Below, piece by piece: positions 21,279 to 37,426 of a stretch of DNA of 64,000 nucleotides (the stretch's first letter is position 1; every line of letters starts with the position of its first letter). Made by a program: the position numbers and the translations under genes. The notes under the pieces were generated by a model, which was not told the origin of the DNA, made no database searches, and saw only the letters and a list, made by a program, of their open reading frames with translations. The stretch is from the IMG/VR virus record IMGVR_UViG_3300030102_006934, positions 124,001 through 188,000 of that record, one strand, 5' to 3'.

Positions 21279-23126
21279 ATGAGTCTAACTAAAACACAAA
21301 TGTTATACGAGATAGGTAAGTCAATCAAAGACCCTATCTATGCTATAGAATCTTACCTAGAAACTGAAGATAGGACTCAAGGAGGATTCGTACCATTCAA
21401 ATTATTTCCAAGACAAAAAGAATTAGTGGAAGCTTACCGTGTGAATGACCATAATATAGTTATGAAACCTAGACAAGCTGGTATATCCACAACGACTGCG
21501 GCGTATTTGGCTATATTAACTGCTTTGGCTTCCGACAAAAGTACACAAAAGATATTGGTCGCGGCTAATAAACAAGAAACAGCTAAGGAATTTTTAAAAA
21601 AAATAAGGGACTTTACAACACAGTTACCTAGTTGGATGGATGTTTACAGACCTGCTGGTTCTGAGACTTGGTTTGACCCAGAGAAAAATTCTAGTTCACA
21701 CTATAAGTTGTGGAATGGTTCAGAGGTAAAGGCGGTAGCATCTTCAAAAGATGCTCTTAGGGGATATACACCTTCTTGTATTGTTGTTGATGAAGCGGCC
21801 TTTATTGAGGGTAACAAGGGTGAAGAGTTTTATACGGCAGCACAACCATCCTTATCGACAGGTGGTAGGTCAATATTAATTTCAACACCAAACGGTCATG
21901 ATCCACTTTACCATAAAGCCTATACAACAGCTGAAAGAGGTAAAAATAATTTTAATATTGTTTCGATGAAATGGTATGAAGATCCACGTTATAATGGTAA
22001 AAACGATGGTTCGGGTATGTCTTGGATTTTACGTGACGAAAAAAGTGGTGATGTCGTTGAAGAAATAGTGGATCCTAAAAGTGGTTTTGGGGAAGATTCC
22101 ACTGTACCTGAAAGCAGGTGGGATGAGATGATTAAAAATGGTTATACACCTAGGTCTAAGTGGTTTGATGATATGTGTGCTCAATTAAATCATAATACAA
22201 GATCTATAGCACAAGAATTGTTATGTTCCTTTGTTGGTTCTGGTGATAACGTTATTGATGATAAATATAAAACCAGACAAGAGAGGGATAATGTTAGAGA
22301 ACCAATTAGAAAAGAGTGGGTAGACGGTAATATGTGGATTTGGGAAGACCCTATAGAAGGTCATCAATATATACTGGCTGCTGACCCTTCTTCTGGTTCT
22401 TCAGATGATTTTGCTGGCCTCGTTATTTGGGATTTCACTACTGGCAATCAAGTTGCTGAGTATCACGGTAAAGTCGCTCCAGATGTACTAGGTGAAATAT
22501 GTAAATACTACGGTGAATCTTATAACGCATTTATTGTGGTTGATATTACTGGTGGTTGGGGAGCTTCTGTTGTTTTAAAATTAATAGAACTAGGTTACCC
22601 CAAAAAGAATCTTTACTATGATGTTACTGTTGGTATAGACTCTGTTGAAAACAACAAAGCGTTACAAAAACACATGGATAGGGGTAAATTACCTGGTTTA
22701 AATTTTCAAAAAAACAGAAACACAATAGTCTCTAAATTAGAAGAAGCTATTAGGATGGACTCATTTAAGATTCGTTCTAAAAGAGCTTTAATGGAAATAG
22801 AAACTTTTGTCTTCATTGGGGGTAGAGCCGACCATATGAAAGGTTATCATGATGATTTATTAATGTCAATAGCTATGTGTTGTTTTGTTGCAGCAACTTC
22901 TTTTAAAGACCTAGAAAAATCTAAGGGTCAGGCTAAAGCTATGGTTAGTAGTTGGTCTGTTCATGTAGGTAATGCTGAAGATGATGATATCTTGAGTGAG
23001 GTTATAAATACTGGTTTTTATACTGACAATGAAAGTTTGAAAAAAAATAAACAAACACTAACACAAACACAAGAACATATGTGGTTATTTAGTGGTATGG
23101 CTGGATTTAAAAAAAATAGGAAATGA
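21279..23126 (+). CDS. terL: terminase large subunit (T4 gp17-like)
   Basis: KPRQAGISTT Walker A, IVVDEAAFI Walker B, ISTPNG, AADPSSG and HDDLLM nuclease motifs. Confidence 0.95.
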   Translation: MSLTKTQMLYEIGKSIKDPIYAIESYLETEDRTQGGFVPFKLFPRQKELVEAYRVNDHNIVMKPRQAGISTTTAAYLAILTALASDKSTQKILVAANKQETAKEFLKKIRDFTTQLPSWMDVYRPAGSETWFDPEKNSSSHYKLWNGSEVKAVASSKDALRGYTPSCIVVDEAAFIEGNKGEEFYTAAQPSLSTGGRSILISTPNGHDPLYHKAYTTAERGKNNFNIVSMKWYEDPRYNGKNDGSGMSWILRDEKSGDVVEEIVDPKSGFGEDSTVPESRWDEMIKNGYTPRSKWFDDMCAQLNHNTRSIAQELLCSFVGSGDNVIDDKYKTRQERDNVREPIRKEWVDGNMWIWEDPIEGHQYILAADPSSGSSDDFAGLVIWDFTTGNQVAEYHGKVAPDVLGEICKYYGESYNAFIVVDITGGWGASVVLKLIELGYPKKNLYYDVTVGIDSVENNKALQKHMDRGKLPGLNFQKNRNTIVSKLEEAIRMDSFKIRSKRALMEIETFVFIGGRADHMKGYHDDLLMSIAMCCFVAATSFKDLEKSKGQAKAMVSSWSVHVGNAEDDDILSEVINTGFYTDNESLKKNKQTLTQTQEHMWLFSGMAGFKKNRK

Positions 23127-23458: not shown

Positions 23459-25342
23459 ATGGCAGATAAAAAAGATAATCTAACTATATATCAAAAGTTG
23501 TTCACAGTTTTTGGTCAAGGTGGTGGTACAATGAGGAGTGATACTAACCTTAACCCAAAGTATAATTTAACCGATAAAGATTTAATTGTTACTAAGTCCA
23601 GAGAGGATTTTGAAAAAACTAAATTACAACTACAACAACAGAGTTACTTAGATTCTCAATGGCAAAAAATTGAGAACGATATGTACCAAAAAGCTACATA
23701 TTATGAAACTACTAGATTAGCTTCCTATATGGATTATGAAGCTATGGAATTTACACCAGAGATAGCTGTTTCTCTTGAAACAATGGCTGAGGAAAGTTGT
23801 ACTTTAAATGAACAAGGACAAATAATGTCCATATATTCAGATTCTTCTAGAATTAAAAAGGTATTAGAAGATTTATTTTTCAATGTTTTAGACATTCACT
23901 CTAACCTACCCATGTGGACTAGAAACACATGTAAATATGGTGATAATTTCGTACACTTAAAATTGAACTATAAGTATGGTGTGATTGGTGCTACACAGTT
24001 GACCAATATTGAAATAAGTAGAAGCGATTCTAATAATTTCGACTATAATGAAACAAATTCTACGACAAACGAAGATTCCAAAAAAGAGGTTAAGTTCGAA
24101 TGGAAGTCAAAAAATATGAGTTTTAACGCTTGGGAAGTAGCTCATTTTAGATTATTAGGTGATGATAGAAAATTACCTTATGGTACATCTGTTTTAGATA
24201 AAGTTAGAAGAACATGGAGACAATTATTATTAGCTGAAGATGCTATGTTAGTGTATCGTGTAACTAGAGCACCAGAAAGAAGGGTGTTTAAGGTATATGT
24301 AGGTAACATAGACGATGAAGACGTGGAATCTTATGTTCAGAAGGTTGCTAATAAATTTAAAAGAACTCAGACAGCAGATAATAAAACAGGTCAACTAGAC
24401 GTTAGGTATAATACTTTGGCTGTAGACCAAGATTATTTTGTACCCGTTAGAGACCCTAACGCACAGAGCCCTATAGAAACCTTACCTGGAGCGACAAATC
24501 TAGACCAAATAGCCGACATACAATTCATACAAAGAAAAATGGTAACAGCACTTAGAGTACCTAAAACGTTTTTAGGTTTTGAGGAACCTATTGGTGAGGG
24601 TAAGAATTTGGCTTTAATGGATATTAGATTTGCGAGAACTATCAATAGGATACAACAAGCTATGATACAAGAATTAAATAAGATAGCTATAGTACATCTA
24701 TATATGTTAGGTTTCCATGAAGAACTTAGTAATTTCAAATTATCATTAAACAACCCATCTACACAAGGTGAAATGTTAAAAGTGGAACAATGGAAAGAAA
24801 AAGTATTGTTATATAAAGACCTAGTTGCTGCCACTGATGGTATAGCACCAACGTCACATACATGGGCTAAAAAGAATATATTTAATTGGTCTGAAGATGA
24901 AATTAAATTAGATTTAGAACAACAAAGATTAGAGAAAGCTGCAGCAGCTGAATTAGAAAAAACACCTGAAGTTATAACTAAGACTGGATATTTCGATAAA
25001 GTAGATAAATTGTATGGAGATATAATGACTCAAAAAATGGGTGGTGATGAAAGTGGTGATACTGGAGATGATGCTGGAGGTGGATTCGGAGGTGACACTG
25101 GAGGTGGATTCGGAGATGATACTGGAGGTGGATTCGGAGATGATACTGGAGGTGGATTCGGAGATGATACTGGAGGTGGTGACACAGAAGGATTTGGTGA
25201 AGGGTTTAGAGGTGACGAAGGAGTGATCGATAATCTTTTATTAGAAGGTAAAAAGAAAAATGAGGATATTATCATGATGACTGATGGTATAGATAGGTTA
25301 TTGAAAGAAGAAAATTTTGACGAAAGTGATATATTAACATAA
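23459..25342 (+). CDS. portal protein (T4 gp20-like)
   Basis: QLLLAEDAMLVYRVTRAPERRVFKVYVGN, IETLPGA, ALRVPK, DIRFARTINRIQ. Confidence 0.95.
   Translation: MADKKDNLTIYQKLFTVFGQGGGTMRSDTNLNPKYNLTDKDLIVTKSREDFEKTKLQLQQQSYLDSQWQKIENDMYQKATYYETTRLASYMDYEAMEFTPEIAVSLETMAEESCTLNEQGQIMSIYSDSSRIKKVLEDLFFNVLDIHSNLPMWTRNTCKYGDNFVHLKLNYKYGVIGATQLTNIEISRSDSNNFDYNETNSTTNEDSKKEVKFEWKSKNMSFNAWEVAHFRLLGDDRKLPYGTSVLDKVRRTWRQLLLAEDAMLVYRVTRAPERRVFKVYVGNIDDEDVESYVQKVANKFKRTQTADNKTGQLDVRYNTLAVDQDYFVPVRDPNAQSPIETLPGATNLDQIADIQFIQRKMVTALRVPKTFLGFEEPIGEGKNLALMDIRFARTINRIQQAMIQELNKIAIVHLYMLGFHEELSNFKLSLNNPSTQGEMLKVEQWKEKVLLYKDLVAATDGIAPTSHTWAKKNIFNWSEDEIKLDLEQQRLEKAAAAELEKTPEVITKTGYFDKVDKLYGDIMTQKMGGDESGDTGDDAGGGFGGDTGGGFGDDTGGGFGDDTGGGFGDDTGGGDTEGFGEGFRGDEGVIDNLLLEGKKKNEDIIMMTDGIDRLLKEENFDESDILT
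25064..25180 (+). repeat. 24-bp coding tandem repeat (GDDTGGGF), about 5 copies, in the portal tail
   Basis: ggagatgatactggaggtggattc repeated. Confidence 0.9.
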
Positions 25343-27746: not shown

Positions 27747-28478
27747 ATGAAAATATTAAAACCAGGAGAAGAAGGATATGGATATCTTGTAGAATATGAT
27801 TCAGGGTTCATATCTTCTGAACTAACTTGTCAAGATGGAGTTTGTTCTAACCATAACCTAATAAAAGAGTTTAAATCGGGATTAAGTTTAGGTCAAGATG
27901 GTACATTACCAGATAAAATAGAAATTTATGCCGTACTACAAAAGTGGGGTGTAGAGAACAAGAATGGGAGGGTATACCCAGAAGAGATTTTGAAAAGAGA
28001 ATCTAAGAGATATCAAGAGTTTATAGATATGGGTACGTCTTTGGGGGAATTAAACCACCCAGAGTCTTCAATTATTGATGCTGACAGAGTTTCACATATG
28101 ATTTCAGAGATTTGGTGGAACGGTAGAACACTTATGGGAAAAATGGAGTTAGATACAACACCAGGTTACCTTAAATCAGGTATTATCTCATCTGTAGGTG
28201 ATAAAGTATTAAATATGATTAGGAAGGGTTGGACCGTTGGTATTTCATCTAGAGGAGTAGGTTCTTTAAAGAATGAAAATGGTAAAAATATTGTACAGGA
28301 GGATTTCGAATTAATTTGTTGGGATATAGTTACTTCTCCATCAACACCAGGTTCTTGGATATCTACCTCGGAAAAAGATTTAAAACCTTTCATGGAGTCT
28401 ACCAAAGGGGATAAAACAAAATTAATAATAGAAGATGACTCTGACTTATTAGATAGTTTAGATAAATTTTTATTGTAA
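27747..28478 (+). CDS. prohead core protease (T4 gp21-like)
   Basis: ENKNGRVYP, LGELNHP, VSH, GISSRGVGSL, WDIVTSPSTPG. Confidence 0.95.
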   Translation: MKILKPGEEGYGYLVEYDSGFISSELTCQDGVCSNHNLIKEFKSGLSLGQDGTLPDKIEIYAVLQKWGVENKNGRVYPEEILKRESKRYQEFIDMGTSLGELNHPESSIIDADRVSHMISEIWWNGRTLMGKMELDTTPGYLKSGIISSVGDKVLNMIRKGWTVGISSRGVGSLKNENGKNIVQEDFELICWDIVTSPSTPGSWISTSEKDLKPFMESTKGDKTKLIIEDDSDLLDSLDKFLL

Positions 28479-28591: not shown

Positions 28592-28915
28592 ATGAAAATG
28601 AAAAAAAGAATTGTAAAATTAAACGAATCTGACTTAGAGTTATTAGTCAAAAAAATTATTAGAGAAGAAGAAATGGATCCTAACTCATCTGATGAAGGTG
28701 GTGAAGAAGAGACGGATAACCCAAAAGATGTTGAGATGTTCTTAGACGCTATGAAAAAGTATTTTATGGACAAATACCCAAGGTTCGCTAATAAAATAAA
28801 TACTAGAAAAGAAAAAGCGATGTTGTTAGCTGCCTTAGCTGAAGAATTGGGTGTAGATACTAATTTGATTAATATGGCTAAAGGAGAATTGAAGAAAGCT
28901 GGTTTAGGCAAGTAA
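28592..28915 (+). CDS. hypothetical protein with IVKLNESDL..KKIIREE leader; putative head cargo
   Basis: leader nearly identical to that of 34543. Confidence 0.6.
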   Translation: MKMKKRIVKLNESDLELLVKKIIREEEMDPNSSDEGGEEETDNPKDVEMFLDAMKKYFMDKYPRFANKINTRKEKAMLLAALAEELGVDTNLINMAKGELKKAGLGK

Positions 28916-28916
28916 T

Positions 28917-29438
28917 ATGAATATCCGTAAAATCATAAAAGAAGAACTCCTTAAAGAGGTTGGTGGTTATGATGATTTAAGTGTTATGGGTCAACATGCT
29001 GGAGCTAGTATGGGAGTATTAACTAGTAGTTACCAAATTTTAATAGATCTATTAACAGATATAGCAAACTCACTTTTAGATAGTGAAAAAGGTTATAGTA
29101 AATTCTCTTTATCTAATTCAGTTATAGGTGATTTAGACAAAGTTACATCTGTAGTGATTAGTGATACTGAAAAAATTTTACAGGATTTTACGGAAGACGA
29201 TGTTATAAAAGAAGGTAAAAGATTTATTGCCCACCTTAAATCATTAGTAAAAAGAATTAGGTTAATATCTAACATGGTTTCTACTTACACAAAATCTGAA
29301 TACGAAGAAGAACTAAGAAAATTAGTGATGGAGTTTTTACCTAAAGCTAAAAAATATGGTGATACTTTGATAAAAAGTAATAACATGTTTAAAGGTAGAT
29401 TTTCTAGAGCAACTGGAGGAAATACTTTTTTCAATTAA
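28917..29438 (+). CDS. hypothetical protein with MNIRKIIKEELLKE leader; putative head cargo
   Basis: leader matches those of 1380 and 35503. Confidence 0.6.
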   Translation: MNIRKIIKEELLKEVGGYDDLSVMGQHAGASMGVLTSSYQILIDLLTDIANSLLDSEKGYSKFSLSNSVIGDLDKVTSVVISDTEKILQDFTEDDVIKEGKRFIAHLKSLVKRIRLISNMVSTYTKSEYEEELRKLVMEFLPKAKKYGDTLIKSNNMFKGRFSRATGGNTFFN

Positions 29439-29767: not shown

Positions 29768-29797
29768 AAAAGACTCAGAAATGGGTCTTTTTTTTTT
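29768..29797 (+). terminator. intrinsic terminator, probably bidirectional
   Basis: AAAAGACTCA-gaaa-TGGGTCTTTT then T-run. Confidence 0.8.
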
Positions 29798-30200
29798 AAT
29801 CCCAATATTCTTTAGGTAAACCAATCTTCTCAGCTAATTTCTTAAATAAACCTTCATGTTCTTCTGATTTGGGTAAGTCCTTACCAACTGCAGCATGTAT
29901 AAGTTCATGGGTTATAACCCATTTTAAGTATTCTACATCCTCTAAAGCTTTGGATTTAATACCCATTTTACCATTCTCACCATTTTTTGGGTGGTTAAAT
30001 CCCGCTATCTTACCATCTTTTATAGTATCATCTATTTTAATATCTATTGGTGGTAGTACTAGTTTATCACCTGTGACATCTAGGTAAACCCTTCCCAAAT
30101 CGTCCACAACATTATTTTTTATTTTAGATATCAAATAATTTGGGTTTTCAACACTTGGTACATCAGCTTCTCTCAGTACTTTTTTAATTAAACTTCTCAT
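29796..30200 (-). CDS. SprT-like zinc metalloprotease with MRSLIKKVLRE leader
   Basis: VITHELIHA...HEGLFKKLA; start set at 30200, downstream of the late motif at 30208-30215. Confidence 0.7.
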   Translation of the reverse strand: MRSLIKKVLREADVPSVENPNYLISKIKNNVVDDLGRVYLDVTGDKLVLPPIDIKIDDTIKDGKIAGFNHPKNGENGKMGIKSKALEDVEYLKWVITHELIHAAVGKDLPKSEEHEGLFKKLAEKIGLPKEYWD

Positions 30201-30337: not shown

Positions 30338-31576
30338 ATGGCAAATGAAAGAAAGTCTATCATCGATGAAGCCCTTTTAGAAAGCGCTCAAATTGAGAAA
30401 GCTTTTGAAGCCAACGCAAAAGAAATACTGACTCGTACAATGAGTTCAGAAATTGAAGAAATGGTAAAGGAATCTTTAGAAGGTTCGATTGGTTTAACGG
30501 AGGATGAAGATGAAGAGAAAGATGAGTTAGAGTTAGATCTAGAATTAGGTGACTCTGATGAAATGGATGCCAGCGGTGCTGGTGAAGAAGTTGACCTAGA
30601 AATGGGTGAACTAGAAATGGATGATGAACCAATGGATGGTGAAATCGAAATGGATGATGTTGAAAGTATTGACTTAACAACAACAGAAATGCCTGAAGTA
30701 ATTAACGTATTCAAGAAAATGAGTGACGATGATGAAATAGAGGTTGTAACTGATGGTGGTAATGTTGAGATTAAAGACACAGAAACTGGTGCTGAGTACA
30801 GAATAGAACTTGGTGGTGAAGAAAGTGAAATGGAGGACATGGAAGCAGATATGGTTGACATGGAACCAGAAATGGGAGATATGGACCCTATGGAACTTGA
30901 TAACGAAGATGAGTCTGAAGAAGAAGAAGTCGAATACCAAGTGGTACTAGATGATGAAGATGAAGATGATGAAGATGGAATGGAAGACGAAATGTCTGGA
31001 GGTGATTACATGGATGACATGGAAGAGGGTAAATCCCCAAGAACACTTTCTAAGGCAAGTAAGCAACCTAATAGAAAATCTGCTGATATCAATAGTAATC
31101 GTATGAAAATGGGTGAGTCTAAAAAACCAAAGTTCTTAAAATTAATTAACGAAAACAAAGATCTTAAAAATAAAGTAGGTTCTATCACTAGTGAAAATGA
31201 AACATTAAAAGAAGACTACAACAAAATGGTTGATGCTTTAAAACAATTTAGAGATAAACTTAATGAAGTAGCCGTTTTCAATAGTAATTTAACTTATTCA
31301 GTTAGATTGTTCACAGAGAACACAACTACAAAAGAAGAAAAATTAGAAATAATCAAGAGATTTGATGACGTTAAAACTTTGAAGGAATCTAAAGCTACCT
31401 ATAAAGGTTTAGTAAAAGAGATTTCTAAAAAAGAACCTATCAAAGAATCTGTTGAGGAAAAATTAAATGAAACTAAAACAAGTGGTTCATCAACAGAAAT
31501 TAATGAATCACAAGTGTATGTTAATCCAGAGTTAGAAAAAATGAAGAAACTTTGGGATTACCAATATAAGCACTAA
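30338..31576 (+). CDS. prohead scaffold/core protein (gp22-like)
   Basis: acidic region plus coiled coil, immediately upstream of the MCP; many (I/L)xE sites. Confidence 0.8.
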   Translation: MANERKSIIDEALLESAQIEKAFEANAKEILTRTMSSEIEEMVKESLEGSIGLTEDEDEEKDELELDLELGDSDEMDASGAGEEVDLEMGELEMDDEPMDGEIEMDDVESIDLTTTEMPEVINVFKKMSDDDEIEVVTDGGNVEIKDTETGAEYRIELGGEESEMEDMEADMVDMEPEMGDMDPMELDNEDESEEEEVEYQVVLDDEDEDDEDGMEDEMSGGDYMDDMEEGKSPRTLSKASKQPNRKSADINSNRMKMGESKKPKFLKLINENKDLKNKVGSITSENETLKEDYNKMVDALKQFRDKLNEVAVFNSNLTYSVRLFTENTTTKEEKLEIIKRFDDVKTLKESKATYKGLVKEISKKEPIKESVEEKLNETKTSGSSTEINESQVYVNPELEKMKKLWDYQYKH

Positions 31577-31603
31577 TAACAAAAAATTAAAAAACCTAAA
31601 AAA

Positions 31604-33406
31604 ATGGGATATTTATTAAAATCAGGAGAAGTTGGTAACATCGGACTTAAGCACCAAAAAGCTGTTCGTGAAGCGACTGTCTCTAAATGGAATGACTTAG
31701 GGTTCTTAGAAGGACTTAATGGTCACACAAGAGAAAACATTGCTTTGTTATATGAAAACACTGCATCTTCTCTAATTAGCGAAACTACTGACGCGGGGAA
31801 CTCTGGTTCTTTCGAAACTGTAGTTTTCCCAATCGTTAGAAGAGTATTTTCTAAATTATTAGCTAACGATATCGTATCTGTACAAGCTATGAACTTACCA
31901 ATCGGTAAATTGTTCTACTTCGTACCTAAAACATCTGACAGAATTTTCGAAAATGGATGGCCAGCATCAGGTGGTACAGCAAAACATGGTGAACCAATCG
32001 TTACTACTTGTTTAACAGGTGGTGACTGTGACCCAACTACTTACTCTGAATGTGCTAAAAATCTATATGATAGATTCTACAATGACGGAATGTTTGACCA
32101 ATCAAAAGGTAAAATTACTGTTGTTGCGACTAACGCTGACCCAGTTGTTTGGACGGCTTGTACTGACGGTCAAGCTGGTAATGAATTTACTGGTGGTGTT
32201 TCTGCATTTGCTGGTGACGGTTCGGTTAGAACTCAAATCCTTAAAATGTGTGAATTCAATGACGCTGGAGCTGGTAGATTAACTGGTCCTAACGGAAACG
32301 AAATGGATACTGAGGAATTCTTAGCATCTTTAATGGTTACTGTTGATGGTCCTATCGTTGATAAAGATAACCAAGTTATTTTTGAATCTGGTGACCAAGT
32401 ACCAGTAAGAGTTGTTACTCAAAAATACGGAAGAGGTATCGTTGATTACGGTGATATCTGTGACGCTGATGGATGTATATACTTAGAGGCTGATTTAACT
32501 CACCCAGTATGTGCAACTTGTGAAAGTGGTACTTTAGATGGTTACATCGGAGCTACTTCTGGAACAACAGCTATCGTTCCTGGTGTTGCTTCAACTGACT
32601 TAGGTGGAACTAACTTCGTAGTTACTTTCAGACAGTACGCAAACTTAGAACTTGAATCTCAAATGGGAGAAGTTTCTTTCGAATTAGAATCTGTAACTGT
32701 TTCTGTAACAGAAAGAAAACTAAGAGCTACTTGGACTCCTGAGTTAGCACAAGATGTATCAGCATTCCATAACATTGATGCTGAAGCTGAATTAACAGCA
32801 TTATTATCTGAACAAGTTGCGGCGGAAATTGACCGTGAAATCTTAAGAGACTTAAGAACAGGTGCGGCTTGGACATTAAGATGGGATTATGACGGATGGA
32901 AGAGATTACCTTCTGGTCAAGCTGCTTACACTCAAAAAGATTGGAACCAGACTTTGATTACGGCAATCAACCAAATTTCAGCACAAATCCATAAGTCTAC
33001 TTTAAGAGGTGGGGCTAACTTTATCGTGGTTTCTTCTGAGGTATCAGCTATTTTTGATGACTTAGAGTACTTCCACGTATCTAACGCTTCTCCAGAACAA
33101 GATAACTATAACATGGGTATTGAGAGAGTAGGTTCTTTATCAGGTAGATATACTGTATATAGAGACCCATACGCTCCAGCTAACACCGTGTTACTTGGAC
33201 ATAAAGGTCAATCATTATTGGATACTGGGTACATTTACGCACCTTACGTTCCATTACAATTGACACCTACAATGTATAACCCATTCAACTTCGTACCTGT
33301 TAAAGGTATCATGACTCGTTACGCTAAGAAAATGGTTAATAACCGTTTCTACGGAACAATCAACGTTGATGGTATTCGTACATTTGATGTTAGAGAATTA
33401 AGATAA
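31604..33406 (+). CDS. major capsid protein (T4 gp23-like)
   Basis: PIVRRVF..LLANDIVSVQAM..P.G, RKLRATWTPELAQD..AFHNIDAEAEL, YAPYVPL, GIMTRY; likely cleavage at LISE|T. Confidence 0.96.
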   Translation: MGYLLKSGEVGNIGLKHQKAVREATVSKWNDLGFLEGLNGHTRENIALLYENTASSLISETTDAGNSGSFETVVFPIVRRVFSKLLANDIVSVQAMNLPIGKLFYFVPKTSDRIFENGWPASGGTAKHGEPIVTTCLTGGDCDPTTYSECAKNLYDRFYNDGMFDQSKGKITVVATNADPVVWTACTDGQAGNEFTGGVSAFAGDGSVRTQILKMCEFNDAGAGRLTGPNGNEMDTEEFLASLMVTVDGPIVDKDNQVIFESGDQVPVRVVTQKYGRGIVDYGDICDADGCIYLEADLTHPVCATCESGTLDGYIGATSGTTAIVPGVASTDLGGTNFVVTFRQYANLELESQMGEVSFELESVTVSVTERKLRATWTPELAQDVSAFHNIDAEAELTALLSEQVAAEIDREILRDLRTGAAWTLRWDYDGWKRLPSGQAAYTQKDWNQTLITAINQISAQIHKSTLRGGANFIVVSSEVSAIFDDLEYFHVSNASPEQDNYNMGIERVGSLSGRYTVYRDPYAPANTVLLGHKGQSLLDTGYIYAPYVPLQLTPTMYNPFNFVPVKGIMTRYAKKMVNNRFYGTINVDGIRTFDVRELR

Positions 33407-33428
33407 TATAAATCTTAAATAATAACTG

Positions 33429-33459
33429 AAGGGGGAACTAAATTAGTTCCCCCTTTTTT
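33429..33459 (+). terminator. intrinsic terminator after MCP
   Basis: AAGGGGGAACTA-aat-TAGTTCCCCCTT then TTTT. Confidence 0.9.
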
Positions 33460-33684: not shown

Positions 33685-34425
33685 TTATTCCCTAACACCC
33701 CTTTTTTGAGCCTGTTCTTTATTTGTTAAACCACTCTCTAACCTTTTGTTAATAATATCCATAGCTTCACTAGGTAACATGGAGTAGACTTTCATGGCGT
33801 TACTAACTCCCATTTGTGAATCTTTCACATCCCAAAGGGTAATCCCATCTGATTTCTTTAGGTCATTATGAAAGGCTATTTTAGCGAAGTCGTTGGTTCG
33901 AGATTCGGCGTCAGTGACTTTTTTATCAATTACAAAAACTAAAATACCATTATCAGTGTATTGTTTATAGTATTTACCGTAGTTATGGTCTTCACTAGAA
34001 ACACACCATTTAGTCCCTTTACCATATAAGTTAGAACTTCTAACACTTAATGGGAATAAAACCAACCATCTATCATCTTCATATAGTACTTCTGTTTCTT
34101 TCTTTTTAACTTCAGAACGTGTAATTTTTTCTTTAGCTACTTTAACAGCGTTGATAATATCTTGATTGGATTCGTAGGAGTAAATATCTTTATTATCTAA
34201 CAAATTTCTTTCAGATAAATCTTCGAAGTCTTTGATTACCTCAAACATTTCTTTAAAAGTTTCGTTTTTAAGTTCAGTATTAATCCACTTGACCCAATCT
34301 GAGGTACACTTTATCATAAAGGGTAGGTACTTATTTGTTTTAGTTGGGTCCATCTCCGCTAGAACACCAATAACATCAATAAGGTAGGTTGGGTTTTTTT
34401 CTTTTAGTTCCTTAATTTTTGCCAT
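33685..34425 (-). CDS. YGxGTKWC-domain protein (tentatively PcfJ-like), paralog of 1380-2924; start probably 34425
   Basis: DPTKTNKYLPFM...WLVLFPLSVRSSNLYGKGTKWCVSS...FVIDK. Confidence 0.6.
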   Translation of the reverse strand: MAKIKELKEKNPTYLIDVIGVLAEMDPTKTNKYLPFMIKCTSDWVKWINTELKNETFKEMFEVIKDFEDLSERNLLDNKDIYSYESNQDIINAVKVAKEKITRSEVKKKETEVLYEDDRWLVLFPLSVRSSNLYGKGTKWCVSSEDHNYGKYYKQYTDNGILVFVIDKKVTDAESRTNDFAKIAFHNDLKKSDGITLWDVKDSQMGVSNAMKVYSMLPSEAMDIINKRLESGLTNKEQAQKRGVRE

Positions 34426-34454
34426 TTTTTTATCTTTTTTGATTATTAACAATA

Positions 34455-34485
34455 CAAATATAGTTATTTTTTATAAACTAACAAA
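34455..34485 (-). promoter_or_regulatory. Bacteroidota-type housekeeping promoter
   Basis: - strand TTTG (34485-34482), 19-nt spacer, TATATTTG (34462-34455). Confidence 0.7.
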
Positions 34486-34542
34486 CATTTTATTAAAAAT
34501 TTTTATAAAAACTTAGATATTTATATAAAAAACAAATTTGTA

Positions 34543-34950
34543 ATGAAAAAAGTAATAAAAATAAACGAGTCTCAATTAGAGTACCTAGTTAAGAAAGTTA
34601 TAAAAGAAGAAGAAAAAGAAACTAAAAAAACTACAGTAACTAAACATCCAGCTTATCCAGCCGTGGATAAATTAGAAAGAGCTTTAGAAGATTTAAAGAT
34701 GGAGTTTAAAGATAGTATTGCTAATGCAGTATCTGGTTCTGATGGTTATCACAGTGAAATAGATAAGTTTTCTGAAGATTTTGGTAAATTTATTACTAAG
34801 GTTTCTAAAATGAAAAGTAAAATCAATGATTATCAAATAGCGAATAAAGATAAGGAGGTGGCTGAAGCTAAGAAACGGAAAGAAAAACAGCGTCAGTACC
34901 AAAATTATATGAGAGAAAAGGCTAGAAATGAAGGTCGTAACTATTATTAA
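34543..34950 (+). CDS. hypothetical protein with VIKINESQL..KKVIKEE leader; putative head cargo
   Basis: late motif at 34517; leader shared with 28592. Confidence 0.6.
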   Translation: MKKVIKINESQLEYLVKKVIKEEEKETKKTTVTKHPAYPAVDKLERALEDLKMEFKDSIANAVSGSDGYHSEIDKFSEDFGKFITKVSKMKSKINDYQIANKDKEVAEAKKRKEKQRQYQNYMREKARNEGRNYY

Positions 34951-34961
34951 AATAAATTGTT

Positions 34962-35501
34962 ATGAGAAGATTTGACAAAAGAAATATTATTACAGAAGCT
35001 AATCAAAGATTAGAAAGAGAATACATAAAAAGTAAAACACTTATAAAAGAAGATATTTTAGAATTAAAACAAATGTCTAAACAAATCTATTCTTACCTAA
35101 AAAAGAAAGGTTACGAGGTTAAAATGAAAACTGAAAAAGGTGAGTCTAGAAAGTCTTTTGATACTAATTTAGATTTAAATGATACTATTCAGTTAGTGAT
35201 ACAAGAAGGAACTGAAGTAGTCATGATAGCTTTACCAGTTCGTGCTGTCGTTAAGAAGTTAACCGGTGATAAGGACCTTAATTCAAGTACGGAAGCTGAT
35301 AAATACGGTAAAGATTTTCAAGATTGGTATGTAAATAAAGAGGTGACTAACTACGTTGATAAATTAGGTGATGAATTAGTTTCACAGTTAAAATCTAAAT
35401 ACCCAACTATGAGACATGGTTTTGATAAAGATGATTCTAGAATGTTTTATTTTATGAGATTTGGTTACGGTAGAAATAAAAAGGGTGGTGATATAAAATA
35501 A
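34962..35501 (+). CDS. hypothetical protein with MRRxDKR..I.EANQRLE leader
   Basis: leader shared with 35791 and 36255. Confidence 0.65.
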   Translation: MRRFDKRNIITEANQRLEREYIKSKTLIKEDILELKQMSKQIYSYLKKKGYEVKMKTEKGESRKSFDTNLDLNDTIQLVIQEGTEVVMIALPVRAVVKKLTGDKDLNSSTEADKYGKDFQDWYVNKEVTNYVDKLGDELVSQLKSKYPTMRHGFDKDDSRMFYFMRFGYGRNKKGGDIK

Positions 35502-35502
35502 A

Positions 35503-35781
35503 GTGAGAAACTTAATCCGTAAAATATTAAAAGAAGAATCAGATAAGCAAACTGATTTAGCCAACTCTAATAGTACTGAACGTAATATATGTGATGATTT
35601 TAGTGTTGATACTTACGAGGAATTGATTGATTTGATTAATAAAGCACACGTCTCAAAAGAAGATGACCCAAAAATAGAAAAATTACTAATTCAGTTGAAG
35701 AAGGATAATGACCGATTGGGTAATGATTTGGATAACTTAAACACCTATCAACATAAGATAGCTAATTTACTGTGTAAATAA
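35503..35781 (+). CDS. hypothetical protein with MRNLIRKILKEE leader (GTG start)
   Basis: leader shared with 14335 and 30200. Confidence 0.6.
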   Translation: MRNLIRKILKEESDKQTDLANSNSTERNICDDFSVDTYEELIDLINKAHVSKEDDPKIEKLLIQLKKDNDRLGNDLDNLNTYQHKIANLLCK

Positions 35782-35790
35782 AAAATAAAA

Positions 35791-36249
35791 ATGAGAAGAC
35801 AGGATAAAAGAATGGTTATTAAGGAAGCTAATCAAAGATTAGAATTAAACCATGTTTTAAAAACAAAACATTTCTTAACAGAAGAAGAAATACAAAATTT
35901 AGATGAGGGTATCAAAGATTGGATAGCTAAAGGTTTAATAGCCATTACATTATTGGGTGGGGGTATGAAATTATACCACATGGACCAACAAGCAGCACAA
36001 GATAAACATGATAGGACTGAGTATTATGAAAAAGCTTTAAAAGACCAAGTGACTAAAACAGAGACTAGGGACTTAGCTAAGTTAGGTTTAGAGATAAATA
36101 AAGAAACTAATAAAGTTAAATTAGCTTACGGTACTTCATCCGAAGATGCTGATGGATTGTTTAAGTCTTACGCTGAGTCTTACATGAAACAACACCCACA
36201 TGAATTTGGTATTGGTACTGACGGTACTATCTATTGGTTACAAAAGTAA
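35791..36249 (+). CDS. hypothetical protein with MRRxDKR leader and one hydrophobic helix
   Basis: MRRQDKRMVIKEANQRLE; WIAKGLIAITLLGGGM. Confidence 0.65.
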   Translation: MRRQDKRMVIKEANQRLELNHVLKTKHFLTEEEIQNLDEGIKDWIAKGLIAITLLGGGMKLYHMDQQAAQDKHDRTEYYEKALKDQVTKTETRDLAKLGLEINKETNKVKLAYGTSSEDADGLFKSYAESYMKQHPHEFGIGTDGTIYWLQK

Positions 36250-36254
36250 TTGAC

Positions 36255-37241
36255 ATGAGAAGGTATGATAAGCGAAGGAATATTATGGAATCTAACTTAA
36301 GGTTAGAGAGGGAATTTATTGCCAGTAAATCTATAACAGTAAATGATTTTATTTTAGAAAATATATCCGAAAGTCAATATATTTCTATGTTAAAAGAATC
36401 ATGTGATGAGCTAGGGATAGAATACGATAATCAACTTAATGAAGAAAGGGGTTTAATAACTGAAGAAGGCTTTACTTTAATGGCAATAAGTGCGGCGTTA
36501 GCGTCTGGTAAATTGTTCGATTTAATTGGTTCATTTTTTAGAAAAGCTTGGAATTTTATTAGTAAACAAATAGCTAAAAAAAGTAAAACATGCAAAGAGG
36601 TATCAAAGGATGAAAGAGGTAAGTGTGCTGAAGCTTTGTTAGCTTCAGGTAAAGGCCCTAAAATTTTAGGTAAGACTTGGTTTGAAAAGGCTGGTGAGTG
36701 GATACATGAAAATATAATAATGACTTTATTTAGGGTTGTCGCTATTGTTTTGTTAGATACCGCACAAGGGATTTTTAGTTCTGGTAAAAAATCTGATGAA
36801 GTACAACAAGACTATTACGGTGGGCCGAAAGGTACCTTTATTGAGGGTGGTAAGTGGGTTGATGATGATAAATTAGTCGATATGGTTGCAAATACTTTAT
36901 TTTATGCAACAATTACTATTGTTGGTTATTTTGGCTTAAAAGAACTATATGCTCTTGGAAAGGATGGTATTGCCACTTTTACTGGTGTAGTAGAGATTGT
37001 TACTTCGGTAACTAAAGGTTATGAATTAATATTACTAGTTATAGCAACAGTAGTAATAAAAAGAGGTTTAGTTAAGTCTTCAGACACTTCTGGTGTTGCT
37101 CATACATTGGGTGAGTGTTTAGAGGGTGGTGGTAAAATAGGTAAAATATTTAAACAGGTAAAAAAGATGAAAAAGGATGATAGTTATAGTCAGGAGGTTC
37201 TAGCTTGTTTAAATAAAAGTTTAGAATTAGCTCATCATTAA
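36255..37241 (+). CDS. hypothetical protein with MRRxDKR leader and several hydrophobic helices (start 36255)
   Basis: MRRYDKRRNIMESNLRLE; FTLMAISAALA, LFRVVAIVLL, LFYATITIVGYFG, LILLVIATVVI. Confidence 0.65.
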   Translation: MRRYDKRRNIMESNLRLEREFIASKSITVNDFILENISESQYISMLKESCDELGIEYDNQLNEERGLITEEGFTLMAISAALASGKLFDLIGSFFRKAWNFISKQIAKKSKTCKEVSKDERGKCAEALLASGKGPKILGKTWFEKAGEWIHENIIMTLFRVVAIVLLDTAQGIFSSGKKSDEVQQDYYGGPKGTFIEGGKWVDDDKLVDMVANTLFYATITIVGYFGLKELYALGKDGIATFTGVVEIVTSVTKGYELILLVIATVVIKRGLVKSSDTSGVAHTLGECLEGGGKIGKIFKQVKKMKKDDSYSQEVLACLNKSLELAHH

Positions 37242-37394
37242 TTTTTTTAAGAAAAAATTATAATAAAATAAAAAATGGGGCGGGATATGAAATTAAAGAT
37301 ATCACGTATTATGAAATGGGGTCTAAAGAACCTTCTTTAGTAAAAGTATTGGTTACAAAAATAAAATTGCGAACAAACTATATCGATAGTTAGG

Positions 37395-37419
37395 AAGGTC
37401 TGAGAAATCAGACCTTTTT
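37395..37419. terminator. terminator at the convergence of the two large gene blocks
   Basis: AAGGTCTGA-gaaa-TCAGACCTT then T-run. Confidence 0.85.
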
Positions 37420-37426
37420 ATTTTTT

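What the first reader, a model, noticed from the sequence alone, without database searches (positions are those of the whole stretch)
34962..37241. Cassette of genes with a conserved ~20-aa leader fused to different cargoes
Seen: MRRFDKRNIITEANQRLERE, MRRQDKRMVIKEANQRLELN and MRRYDKRRNIMESNLRLERE; the first two share gaagctaatcaaagattagaa at DNA level. Each leader is followed by a second (I/L)xE site and then a non-homologous body. Two bodies have hydrophobic helices, and the 36255 product has about four. The array sits between a late motif (34517) and a terminator (37395). Inference: a variable effector array in which the leader DNA serves as a recombination anchor for cargo swapping; the hydrophobic cargoes could be ejected proteins that insert into the host membrane.
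Basis: partly seen in the sequence, partly recalled or inferred. Interest (0 to 1): 0.7.

Follow-up and report, generated by a model that had tools for sequence, protein, structure and literature searches.

The report
Leader-tagged cargo gene cassettes, T4-like jumbo phage

Summary
Three adjacent + strand genes (34962, 35791, 36255) begin with MRRxDKR..IxE.N.RLE. This motif occurs nowhere else in the 380-kb genome, and the gene bodies are unrelated by BLAST and by hhalign.

The same leader starts 165 protein clusters in public metagenomes, almost always at residue 1. It is joined to at least 87 unrelated cargo families. It is absent from 596 Gb of prokaryote genomes and from GenBank phages.

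Conservation stops abruptly after Glu30. (L/I)xE, the cleavage motif of the T4 gp21 prohead protease, ends at residue 12 in 149 of 211 proteins and at residue 30 in 130 of 211.

The phage is a distant T4 relative. It has a gp21-like protease with the catalytic His and Ser, and the array sits just after the capsid gene behind a motif shared with head genes.

Related phages carry one to five or more different cassettes at this spot. Homology breaks at the leader ends, and one cassette is flanked by perfect 103-nt leader repeats.

Two further genes in the array carry other N-terminal tags that orthologues exchange for this leader.

Best reading: an analogue of the T4 internal-protein loci with a capsid-targeting sequence. 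Packaging, cleavage and injection are inferred, not shown. Cargo functions are unknown.

The parts
34516..34525 (+). Promoter-like motif GATATTTATA, 18-27 nt upstream of the first gene of the array.
   Evidence: ATATTTAT is 15-fold enriched upstream of genes. It precedes the terminase, portal, prohead protease and scaffold genes, the 502-aa (-) gene and this array. The strict 9-mer has 79 copies in the genome, 49 of them in promoter position, and is absent before the DNA polymerase and RNR genes.
34543..34950 (+). p135, the conserved first gene of the array. It has a type-2 N-terminal tag (MKKVIKINESQLEYLVKKVIKEEE; (L/I)xE ends at residues 9 and 22) and a basic C-terminus.
   Evidence: It is present in about 40 syntenic loci. 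In L003, L014, L017, L024, L027, L029 and L057 the same body carries an MRRxDxK..M.EANKR leader instead.
34962..35501 (+). Cassette A. The leader is residues 1-30 (nt 34962-35051; ITE at 12, IKE at 30). The mature part is about 17 kDa and basic.
   Evidence: The body gives a confident alpha/beta model (pLDDT 83, pTM 0.78) with no significant structural match. It is absent from the near-identical phage L002.
35503..35781 (+). p92 (GTG start), with the short type-3 tag MRNLIRKILKEE. The mature part is acidic, about 9 kDa.
   Evidence: Orthologues in L007, L022, L025, L030 and L050 carry the MRRFDK... leader fused at the same junction (..LLSED|DKQTDL against ..ILKEE|SDKQTDL).
35791..36249 (+). 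Cassette B. The leader is residues 1-31 (IKE at 12, LTE at 31). There is one moderately hydrophobic helix at residues 44-62.
   Evidence: The first 103 nt are 100% identical to two leader copies in L002, while the B bodies are about 88-90% identical.
36255..37241 (+). Cassette C. After the leader comes a helical body with four to five hydrophobic segments and conserved Cys and His residues. It belongs to the largest cargo family (27 members).
   Evidence: The AF2 model is all-helical but of low confidence (pLDDT 59). Gene callers start it at Met11, which cuts the leader.
37347..37364 (.). 17-18-nt direct repeat of the 3' end of gene B (TATTGGTTACAAAA.TAA), which brackets the C cassette.
   Evidence: Alignment of the B end, the post-C region and the L002 B end. 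L002 lacks C and runs straight on from B.
37391..37420 (+). Intrinsic-terminator-like hairpin plus T-run that closes the five-gene unit.
   Evidence: 13-bp stem. No terminator-like site on the + strand lies inside 34543-37241.
27747..28478 (+). Prohead protease of the T4 gp21 family, the presumed leader-processing enzyme.
   Evidence: phrog_207 at E 1e-41. T4 gp21 structure 5jbl at E 2e-19, with His in ELNHP and Ser in ISSRG. A homologue is present on the leader-bearing contigs G001, G004 and G005.
28592..29438 (+). Two small head-module ORFs between protease and scaffold (28592-28915 and 28917-29438) that carry type-2 and type-3 tags.
   Evidence: The translations begin MKMKKRIVKLNESDLELLVKKIIREEE and MNIRKIIKEELLKE.
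30338..33406 (+). Context: the acidic scaffold protein (30338-31576; N-terminal SIIDE|A site) and the T4-type major capsid protein (31604-33406; LYE51 and ISE60 lie 16 and 7 residues downstream of the ungapped equivalent of the T4 Glu65 cut).

Best explanation
The five-gene unit 34543-37241 is the counterpart, in a distant T4-superfamily jumbo phage, of the T-even internal-protein (IP) loci.

Proposed mechanism (inferred). Each product starts with a basic helical N-terminal tag. For A, B and C this is a 30-residue bipartite leader: residues 1-12 end in I-x-E|A and residues 13-30 end in L-(L/I)-K-E. The tag docks the protein into the scaffolding core of the assembling prohead. The gp21-type prohead protease (27747-28478) then cuts after the (L/I)-x-E glutamates, removing the tag and leaving the mature cargo inside the capsid. 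The cargo enters the host together with the DNA.

Shown.
- The same tag sequence, at both DNA and protein level, precedes unrelated bodies.
- Homologous recombination between leaders, plus some microhomology events, adds, deletes and swaps cassettes. Related phages therefore carry different sets.
- This covers the modular architecture, cargo turnover, breakpoints at the leader, the strictly N-terminal position, the conservation cliff after Glu30 and the presence of the protease.

Inferred.
- Capsid targeting, cleavage and ejection.
- What the cargoes do. By analogy they would be host take-over or anti-defence proteins. C, and perhaps B, could act at the membrane.
For: 1. The leader is a discrete module. 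165 cluster representatives out of 1.84 billion match a 34-position leader profile, at residues 1-~33 in 148 of the 150 listed. Together with the contig scans, 213 proteins fall into 87 BLAST-unrelated cargo families. The A, B and C bodies score about 1% by hhalign.

2. There is a conservation cliff. Information content is 2.2-3.8 bits at positions 21-29 and below 0.75 bits from position 32 on. [LI]xE ends at residue 12 in 149 of 211 proteins and at residue 30 in 130 of 211, against about 2 expected per position.

3. L/I-x-E is the cleavage motif of T4 gp21, and T4 IPs carry 10-19-residue N-terminal capsid-targeting propeptides (PMC9026906). T4 Ip1-3 share only the leader and lie in variable hotspots (PMC12373910, PMC3012670). 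T4 IPII and IPIII both start MKTYQEFIAE|A and then diverge. Here the first site reads ..IITE|A or ..VIKE|A.

4. The phage has a T4-type head module with a gp21 homologue that keeps the catalytic His and Ser. The capsid protein and scaffold carry (L/I)xE sites where they are expected.

5. The tags are interchangeable. Orthologous p135 and p92 bodies carry either the MRR leader or the type-2 or type-3 tag. All tags end in h-h-K/x-E-(E/D). Type-2 and type-3 tags also head two ORFs between protease and scaffold.

6. [LI]xE is depleted in cargo bodies (observed/expected 0.78, z -2.9). It is 1.09 in all ORFs of the phage, and [LI]xD is 1.21 in the cargo.

7. The array lies about 1.1 kb downstream of the capsid gene, across one (-) strand gene. 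It sits behind the motif that also precedes terminase, portal and protease, and it is closed by a terminator.

8. Recombination signatures.

9. Selection acts on the peptide. The leaders of A and C differ by synonymous changes.

10. Fragments of p135, A, p92 and B occur in four metatranscriptome assemblies. This is weak evidence, because DNA carry-over is possible.
Against: - There is no direct evidence that any of these proteins is in a virion, is cleaved, or is ejected. No cultured relative or virion proteome exists: the leader is absent from 50,697 GenBank phages.
- The protease-leader complex prediction gave no answer.
- The first I-x-E site is not universal. Many family members read NIEQ or NIQK there.
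- About a quarter to a third of the proteins lack an (L/I)xE ending at residues 27-34: 63 of 211 by [LI]xE, 49 of 211 if V and M are allowed.
- The [LI]xE depletion is modest, and neighbouring spacings are also slightly low.
- The upstream motif is not proven to be late-specific. A looser form precedes a DnaB-like gene.
- A protein with four to five hydrophobic helices (C) would be an awkward capsid passenger.
- Type-3-like N-termini also occur on about 10 ORFs scattered over the genome whose roles are unknown.
Confidence: 0.6

Rival explanations
1. The leader is an uncleaved docking or oligomerisation helix. It brings diverse phage proteins to a common partner in the infected cell, such as a host complex, the membrane or a phage factory, and not into the capsid.
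For: The leader is predicted to be helical (residues 3-24) and strongly basic (median pI 9.8). The cargoes are mostly acidic orphans. The first IxE site is not universal. Nothing shows packaging.
Against: It does not explain three things: the abrupt end of conservation exactly at an (L/I)-x-E glutamate, the exchange with tags found on ORFs inside the protease-scaffold block, or the [LI]xE depletion in the bodies. The position and the upstream motif group the array with head genes.
Confidence: 0.17
2. The products are packaged and processed, but they are scaffold-core or DNA-condensing head components (like T4 gp67, gp68 or IPIII), not injected effectors.
For: p135 is conserved in about 40 loci and has a very basic C-terminus. 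Tags also occur on ORFs between protease and scaffold. T4 IPIII affects head assembly (PMC9026906).
Against: A, B, C and D come and go between phages whose flanks are 95-100% identical. They are therefore dispensable for head assembly. 87 unrelated families is far more diversity than a structural role needs.
Confidence: 0.13
3. The genes are ordinary paralogues that diverged beyond recognition. The 5' end stays conserved for RNA-level reasons such as translation initiation or mRNA structure.
For: The genes are tandem and co-oriented. The 21-103-nt identical stretches could serve an RNA function.
Against: The leaders keep the peptide through synonymous changes. The bodies differ in length (73-484 aa), in fold class and in hhalign score (about 1%). 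The same body occurs with different tags. The profile matches at protein level across 165 clusters.
Confidence: 0.04
4. The leader is a secretion signal of Sec, Tat or lipoprotein type that exports the cargoes from the infected cell.
For: The N-terminal position and the twin arginines at residues 2-3 resemble a Tat motif superficially.
Against: No hydrophobic core follows. The leader is charged throughout, and no hydrophobic 15-mer lies in the first 40 residues. There is no lipobox cysteine. The conserved end is an acidic (L/I)xE, not an AxA site.
Confidence: 0.02

Closest known systems
[quoted passage not shown] 1994 as cited there)
   Same: A short N-terminal leader is shared by otherwise unrelated proteins. 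The leader ends in L/I-x-E followed by Ala. The phage has a gp21-family prohead protease. The genes are tandem, co-oriented and dispensable, and their content differs between close relatives. Most cargoes are small orphan proteins.
   Different: The leader has no sequence similarity to MKTYQEFIAE beyond the h-I-x-E|A end. It is 30 residues long with two cleavage-type sites, against 10-19 in T4. Three tag types are interchangeable. The array lies beside the capsid gene. At least 87 cargo families were found, against about 10 reported ips. Some cargoes are hydrophobic. The host is probably Bacteroidota. Packaging and ejection are unproven here.
Ejection and inner-body proteins of giant phages phiKZ, 201phi2-1 and SPN3US, with propeptides removed by gp21-related proteases (PMC9026906, PMC5694885)
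   Same: These are jumbo phages that load many proteins into the head. N-terminal propeptides are cut after Glu at a three-residue motif, often at several redundant sites.
   Different: Their motif is S/A/G-x-E, not L/I-x-E. Their packaged proteins form paralogue families, not one leader joined to unrelated bodies. This phage has a T4-type head module, not a phiKZ-type one.
Promoter/stem-loop cassettes (PeSLs) that mediate modular shuffling in hyperplastic regions of T4-type genomes (PMC2839356, PMC4122927; abstracts seen)
   Same: Short conserved sequences that flank variable genes act as homology for insertion, deletion and replacement of gene cassettes between related phages.
   Different: Here the recombination anchor is coding sequence, the leader, kept by selection on the peptide. 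It is not an intergenic regulatory element.
MuF (SPP1 gp7)-domain polymorphic toxins of temperate phages (recalled from general knowledge, not read here)
   Same: A conserved N-terminal capsid-association module is joined to variable C-terminal cargoes that are delivered with the DNA.
   Different: The MuF module is a domain of about 300 residues that binds the portal and is not removed. No MuF or toxin Pfam domain was found in any of the ~138 leader-bearing proteins or neighbouring tagged ORFs scanned.

Membership tests
T4-type CTS-tagged internal head proteins | A short N-terminal leader shared by proteins that are otherwise unrelated | tested here: met
T4-type CTS-tagged internal head proteins | The leader ends at the prohead-protease motif (L/I)-x-E | tested here: met
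   The motif ends at residue 12 in 149 of 211 proteins and at residue 30 in 130 of 211, against about 2 expected. Conservation stops after Glu30. This is sequence-level evidence only.
T4-type CTS-tagged internal head proteins | The phage encodes a gp21-family prohead protease with catalytic His and Ser | tested here: met
   phrog_207 at E 1e-41. PDB 5jbl at E 2e-19, with His and Ser in place.
T4-type CTS-tagged internal head proteins | The leader is homologous to the T4 CTS (MKTYQEFIAE) | tested here: not met
   T4 IPII and IPIII were translated from NC_000866. Only the h-I-x-E|A end and the overall layout resemble it, so the relation is analogy, not sequence membership.
T4-type CTS-tagged internal head proteins | The locus is hypervariable between closely related phages and the genes are dispensable | tested here: met
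   About 16 distinct gene orders, 445-3477 bp. A and C are absent from L002 and D is present there, with flanks 95-100% identical.
T4-type CTS-tagged internal head proteins | Late transcription together with the head genes | tested here: inconclusive
   The upstream motif is shared with terminase, portal and protease and is absent before the DNA polymerase and RNR genes. No timing data exist. Metatranscriptome fragments only show presence.
T4-type CTS-tagged internal head proteins | The proteins are inside the capsid with the leader removed, and are ejected with the DNA | not testable with these tools
   No isolate or virion proteome exists. The complex prediction gave no answer.
MuF-domain polymorphic capsid-delivered toxins | An N-terminal MuF (Phage_Mu_F) domain | tested here: not met
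   Pfam scans of ~138 leader-bearing proteins and neighbouring tagged ORFs gave no MuF hit.
Sec, Tat or lipoprotein signal peptides | A hydrophobic core after the basic N-region, followed by a signal-peptidase site | tested here: not met
   The leader is charged throughout. No hydrophobic window lies in residues 1-40 of A, B or C.
phiKZ/SPN3US-type ejection-protein propeptides | An S/A/G-x-E cleavage motif and phiKZ-type head genes | tested here: not met
   The conserved sites are I/L-x-E. The head module is T4-type.

The most novel reading that the evidence does not exclude
A 30-residue, two-site 'address label', together with two shorter interchangeable labels, marks the whole injected proteome of an uncultured lineage of marine and freshwater jumbo T4-like phages that probably infect Bacteroidota. 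If so, the 165+ protein clusters (at least 87 unrelated families, nearly all without any Pfam domain) are a ready-made catalogue of injected host take-over and anti-defence proteins. The catalogue would include membrane-active proteins, an annexin-repeat protein and fused two-cassette polyproteins that the head protease would separate.
Probability: 0.45. Interest if true: 0.7.

Novelty: new variant of a known kind. Interest (0 to 1): 0.58.

Why it matters
In T4, the internal proteins are the first phage molecules to meet host immunity. All three turned out to be specific inhibitors of type IV restriction enzymes (PMC12373910). Recognising them depends on the leader.

The leader described here extends that principle to a lineage with no cultured member, where sequence annotation returns nothing. 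It picks out, from raw metagenomes, hundreds of candidate injected proteins. It gives a precise prediction of their mature N-termini, after Glu12 and Glu30. It also offers a candidate capsid-loading tag for engineering phages of Bacteroidota.

The data also give an unusually clean natural example of a coding sequence acting as the homology arm for cassette exchange: perfect 103-nt repeats around one cassette, and breakpoints at the leader end in several populations.

Tried and rejected
- PHROGs and Pfam on the five array proteins and on 118 leader-bearing representatives gave no informative family. The exceptions were one annexin repeat, one CarboxypepD_reg domain and one DUF1269.
- tblastn of two leader versions and of p135 against 50,697 GenBank phages found nothing. 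Megablast of the region hit only 33 nt of a Flavobacterium phage capsid gene.
- The leader pattern has 0 matches in 596 Gb of prokaryote genomes. It is therefore neither a prophage nor a cellular feature.
- The protease plus leader (residues 1-45) complex prediction returned 'no answer' and is not used as evidence either way.
- The AF2 model of C has pLDDT 59, too poor for a fold search. ESM Atlas searches for C and A gave only sub-threshold leads.
- The confident model of the A body has no significant match in PDB, AFDB clusters or BFVD. The best E-values are about 1e-2, and TM is below 0.5 in PDB and BFVD. One unnamed AFDB cluster (R6PAZ4) reaches TM 0.52 by query at E 2e-2. The faint likeness to GHKL ATP-binding domains and to tail terminators was rejected.
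- The search for related loci with the C protein alone found nothing in viral contigs.
- Repoila et al. 1994 is not held, and the Petrov 2010 review does not mention IPs. The claim about recombination at T-even ip leaders therefore rests on secondary citations.
- The DNA-run layout gave no clean joints, only contig breaks and loose ends at the leaders.
Full report
WHAT IS THERE

The window is bases 124001-188000 of a single-contig virus record of 380,343 bp and 31% G+C, which CheckV rates complete.

Its + strand carries a T4-type head module:
- large terminase, 21279-23126;
- portal, 23459-25342;
- prohead protease, 27747-28478 (phrog_207, E 1e-41);
- a very acidic scaffold protein, 30338-31576;
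- a 600-aa gp23-type capsid protein, 31604-33406.

The capsid protein's nearest isolates are Flavobacterium phage immuto, Microcystis phage Mel-JY01 and Rhodothermus phage RM378, at 36-45% identity. The phage is therefore an uncultured, distant member of the T4 superfamily.

After the capsid-gene terminator (33428-33456) and one (-) strand gene comes a five-gene + strand unit. It starts behind GATATTTATA (34516-34525) and ends at a hairpin terminator (37391-37420). Its genes are:
- p135, 34543-34950;
- A, 34962-35501;
- p92, 35503-35781;
- B, 35791-36249;
- C, 36255-37241.

- A, B and C begin with the quoted peptides.
- RRxDKR occurs only at these three N-termini in all six frames of the genome.
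- The shared 21-mer occurs twice, against 0 expected.
- Similarity between the three is limited to the N-terminal 39-96 residues and is strongest over the first ~30-50.
- Profiles of the three body families, built from 6, 6 and 12 sequences, give hhalign probabilities near 1%.
- C has four to five hydrophobic segments and B has one moderate segment.

THE LEADER IS A WIDESPREAD, STRICTLY N-TERMINAL MODULE ON MANY CARGOES

- A degenerate DNA pattern for the leader found 8 viral contigs and 51 metagenome contigs. It found none in 596 Gb of prokaryote genomes.
- A 34-position profile of 36 leaders, searched against 1.84 billion cluster representatives, found 165 at E <= 1e-3. In 148 of the 150 listed, the match starts at residue 1.
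- Pooling all sources gives 213 proteins of at least 76 aa. Their sequences beyond residue 36 fall into 87 BLAST-unrelated families of 76-484 aa, with a median of 165 aa.
- Pfam recognises almost none of them.

WHERE THE LEADER ENDS

- In the 135 proteins that share the register, information content is 2.2-3.8 bits at positions 21-29. It falls below 0.75 bits from position 32 on. The consensus of that stretch reads (Y/F)-L-K-S-K-G-L-(L/I)-K-E.
- Without selecting on register, [LI]xE ends at residue 12 in 149 of 211 proteins and at residue 30 in 130 of 211. About 2 per position are expected.
- The module is therefore about 30 residues long and ends exactly at an (L/I)-x-Glu.
- The leaders of A and C differ by synonymous changes, so the peptide is what is conserved.

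THE LINK TO T4

- T4 gp21 cuts after Glu in L/I-x-E.
- The T4 internal proteins carry N-terminal propeptides of 10-19 residues, the capsid-targeting sequences. These load the proteins, and foreign proteins fused to them, into the scaffolding core, and are then cut off (PMC9026906).
- Ip1-3 share nothing except this leader, lie in variable hotspots and are injected inhibitors of type IV restriction enzymes (PMC12373910, PMC3012670).
- T4 IPII and IPIII, read from NC_000866, both begin MKTYQEFIAE|A and then diverge. The first site here reads ..IITE|A or ..VIKE|A at residues 9-13.
- The protease of this phage aligns to the T4 gp21 structure 5jbl (E 2e-19), with His and Ser at the catalytic positions.
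- The capsid protein has LYE51 and ISE60, 16 and 7 residues downstream of the ungapped equivalent (about residue 44) of the T4 cut after Glu65.
- The scaffold starts with SIIDE|A, conserved as SILEE|A in a 56%-identical relative.

THREE INTERCHANGEABLE TAGS

- p135 starts with MKKVIKINESQLEYLVKKVIKEEE in the window. Its orthologues in seven loci start with an MRRxDxK..M.EANKR leader instead.
- p92 starts with MRNLIRKILKEE here. In five loci its orthologues carry the MRRFDK... leader, joined at the same point.
- All three tag types end in two hydrophobic residues, then x-Glu, then an acidic residue.
- The type-2 and type-3 tags also head the two small ORFs between protease and scaffold (28592-28915 and 28917-29438), where T4 keeps its core proteins.
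- All five genes of the unit therefore belong to one system.

A MODEST INDEPENDENT TEST

If the cargoes meet an (L/I)xE-specific protease, that motif should be avoided inside them.
- In one representative per family, [LI]xE is at 0.78 of the shuffled expectation (z -2.9).
- In all ORFs of the phage it is at 1.09.
- In the cargoes, [LI]xD is at 1.21 and [LI]xK at 1.31.
- The direction is as predicted, but the effect is moderate. [LI]xxE is also slightly low, at 0.84.

CARGO TURNOVER AND THE RECOMBINATION ANCHOR

- About 40 loci share the synteny capsid gene, (-) 246-aa gene, p135, [array], (-) 502-aa gene.
- The array ranges from 445 to 3477 bp, holds one to five or more cassettes, and occurs in about 16 distinct orders.
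- L002 has flanks 95-100% identical to the window. It lacks A and C and holds a novel cassette D.
- Homology between the window and L002 runs through p92 and the first 104 nt of the following leader, then stops.
- The leaders of window B, L002 D and L002 B are identical over 103 nt, while the B bodies are about 88-90% identical. D is thus bracketed by perfect direct repeats. Deleting D between them yields the window's order.
- Against L052 and L024, homology ends 94, 66 and 80 nt into the leaders of A and C, and other cargoes follow.
- C is bracketed by a 17-18-nt repeat of the 3' end of B, so microhomology events contribute as well.
- In other samples:
  - a metatranscriptome contig joins 34950 to 35504, so A is absent;
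  - loose ends show the end of D before the B leader, at 35788;
  - a family-5 cargo follows nt 80 of the C leader, at 36334.
- DNA assemblies from four further marine runs contain the window's arrangement. Their contigs break at 35028, 35854-35881 and 36343-36353, that is inside the leaders.

WHAT THE CARGOES ARE

Their functions are unknown.
- The A body folds confidently (pLDDT 83, pTM 0.78) into a compact alpha/beta domain with no significant structural neighbour.
- C belongs to the largest family, with 27 members. It is helical, has four to five hydrophobic segments and invariant Cys and His residues, and gave only a low-confidence model.
- One cargo (L052:4934-6202) has an annexin repeat.
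- Only 8 of 87 families have a strongly hydrophobic segment. The bodies are mostly acidic, with a median pI of 5.2, while the leader is basic at pI 9.8.

LIMITS

- Nothing shows that these proteins are in particles, are cleaved, or are ejected.
- The complex prediction gave no answer.
- The first IxE site is replaced in many relatives.
- The upstream motif is shared with head genes and is missing before the DNA polymerase and RNR genes. Its timing is unknown, and a looser form precedes a DnaB-like gene.
- RNA-library contigs prove presence, not transcription.

VERDICT

- The modular architecture and cassette exchange at the leader are demonstrated.
- The capsid-targeting and propeptide mechanism is the best-supported explanation, at about 0.6.
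- The effector role is an inference by analogy.
- This is a new, sequence-unrelated and more elaborate variant of the T4 internal-protein principle, found in an uncultured phage lineage.

Noticed in passing
window 29796-30197 (-): A 133-aa ORF on the opposite strand inside the head module starts MRSLIKKVLRE, which resembles the type-3 tag. It has an HExxH motif and a near-threshold SprT-like Pfam match (E 6e-5), and ATATTTAT lies 15 nt upstream. It may be a tagged metallopeptidase.
   Followed up: partly
genome C1: 73890, 93203, 95869, 217282, 312283, 341472, 345456, 370527 (outside the window): About ten further ORFs scattered over the genome begin with M(K/R)xLI(K/R)K(I/V)L(K/R)E. In several, D/E-F-D/E-W follows (for example MKNLIRKILKEETEDFDW). 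Every occurrence of the motif in the genome is N-terminal. The same N-termini recur in L006 and L009. It is unknown whether these are also capsid tags.
   Followed up: partly
window 36255-36284; P0001, P0002: Public gene calls and the ESM Atlas start protein C at Met11 (MESNLRLE...), which cuts off the conserved first ten residues. Leader-based searches of annotated proteins will therefore miss some members.
   Followed up: yes
P0082 (427 aa); P0150 (470 aa): P0082 holds two complete leader-plus-cargo units in one ORF, with the second leader at residues 238-269. It could be a natural polyprotein if the leader is cleaved. P0150 has an internal hybrid tag (..KITESQRSLLKSKGLLKED) that joins a type-2 first half to a type-1 second half.
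   Followed up: no
window 34453-34490, upstream of the (-) gene 33685-34425; also 12933: TATATTTG (TAnnTTTG, the form of the Bacteroidota sigma-A -7 element, from general knowledge) is enriched upstream of a subset of genes. Start codons are preceded by A-rich tracts, not Shine-Dalgarno sites. One homologue of C is labelled as coming from a Bacteroidota MAG. Together these hint at a Bacteroidota host.
   Followed up: partly
window 31604-33406: The capsid protein is 600 aa. Residues ~105-287 have no counterpart in the alignment to T4 gp23, which suggests a large insertion domain.
   Followed up: no
L052:4934-6202 (-): A 422-aa leader-bearing cargo carries an annexin repeat (Pfam PF00191, E 2.5e-8, above the cutoff). 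Annexin repeats bind membranes in a calcium-dependent way and are rare in phages.
   Followed up: no
window 37242-37346: The roughly 105 nt between the stop codon of C and the repeated 3' end of B hold only a short ATG-rich remnant with no ORF of 30 aa or more. It is probably debris carried in with the C cassette.
   Followed up: no
L008:2524-7429 (205,931-bp contig G001): A more distant jumbo relative, whose protease is 56% identical, has four tandem leader genes that form two paralogue pairs (479, 331, 331 and 479 aa). They lie in a different genomic context from the capsid-proximal hotspot.
   Followed up: partly
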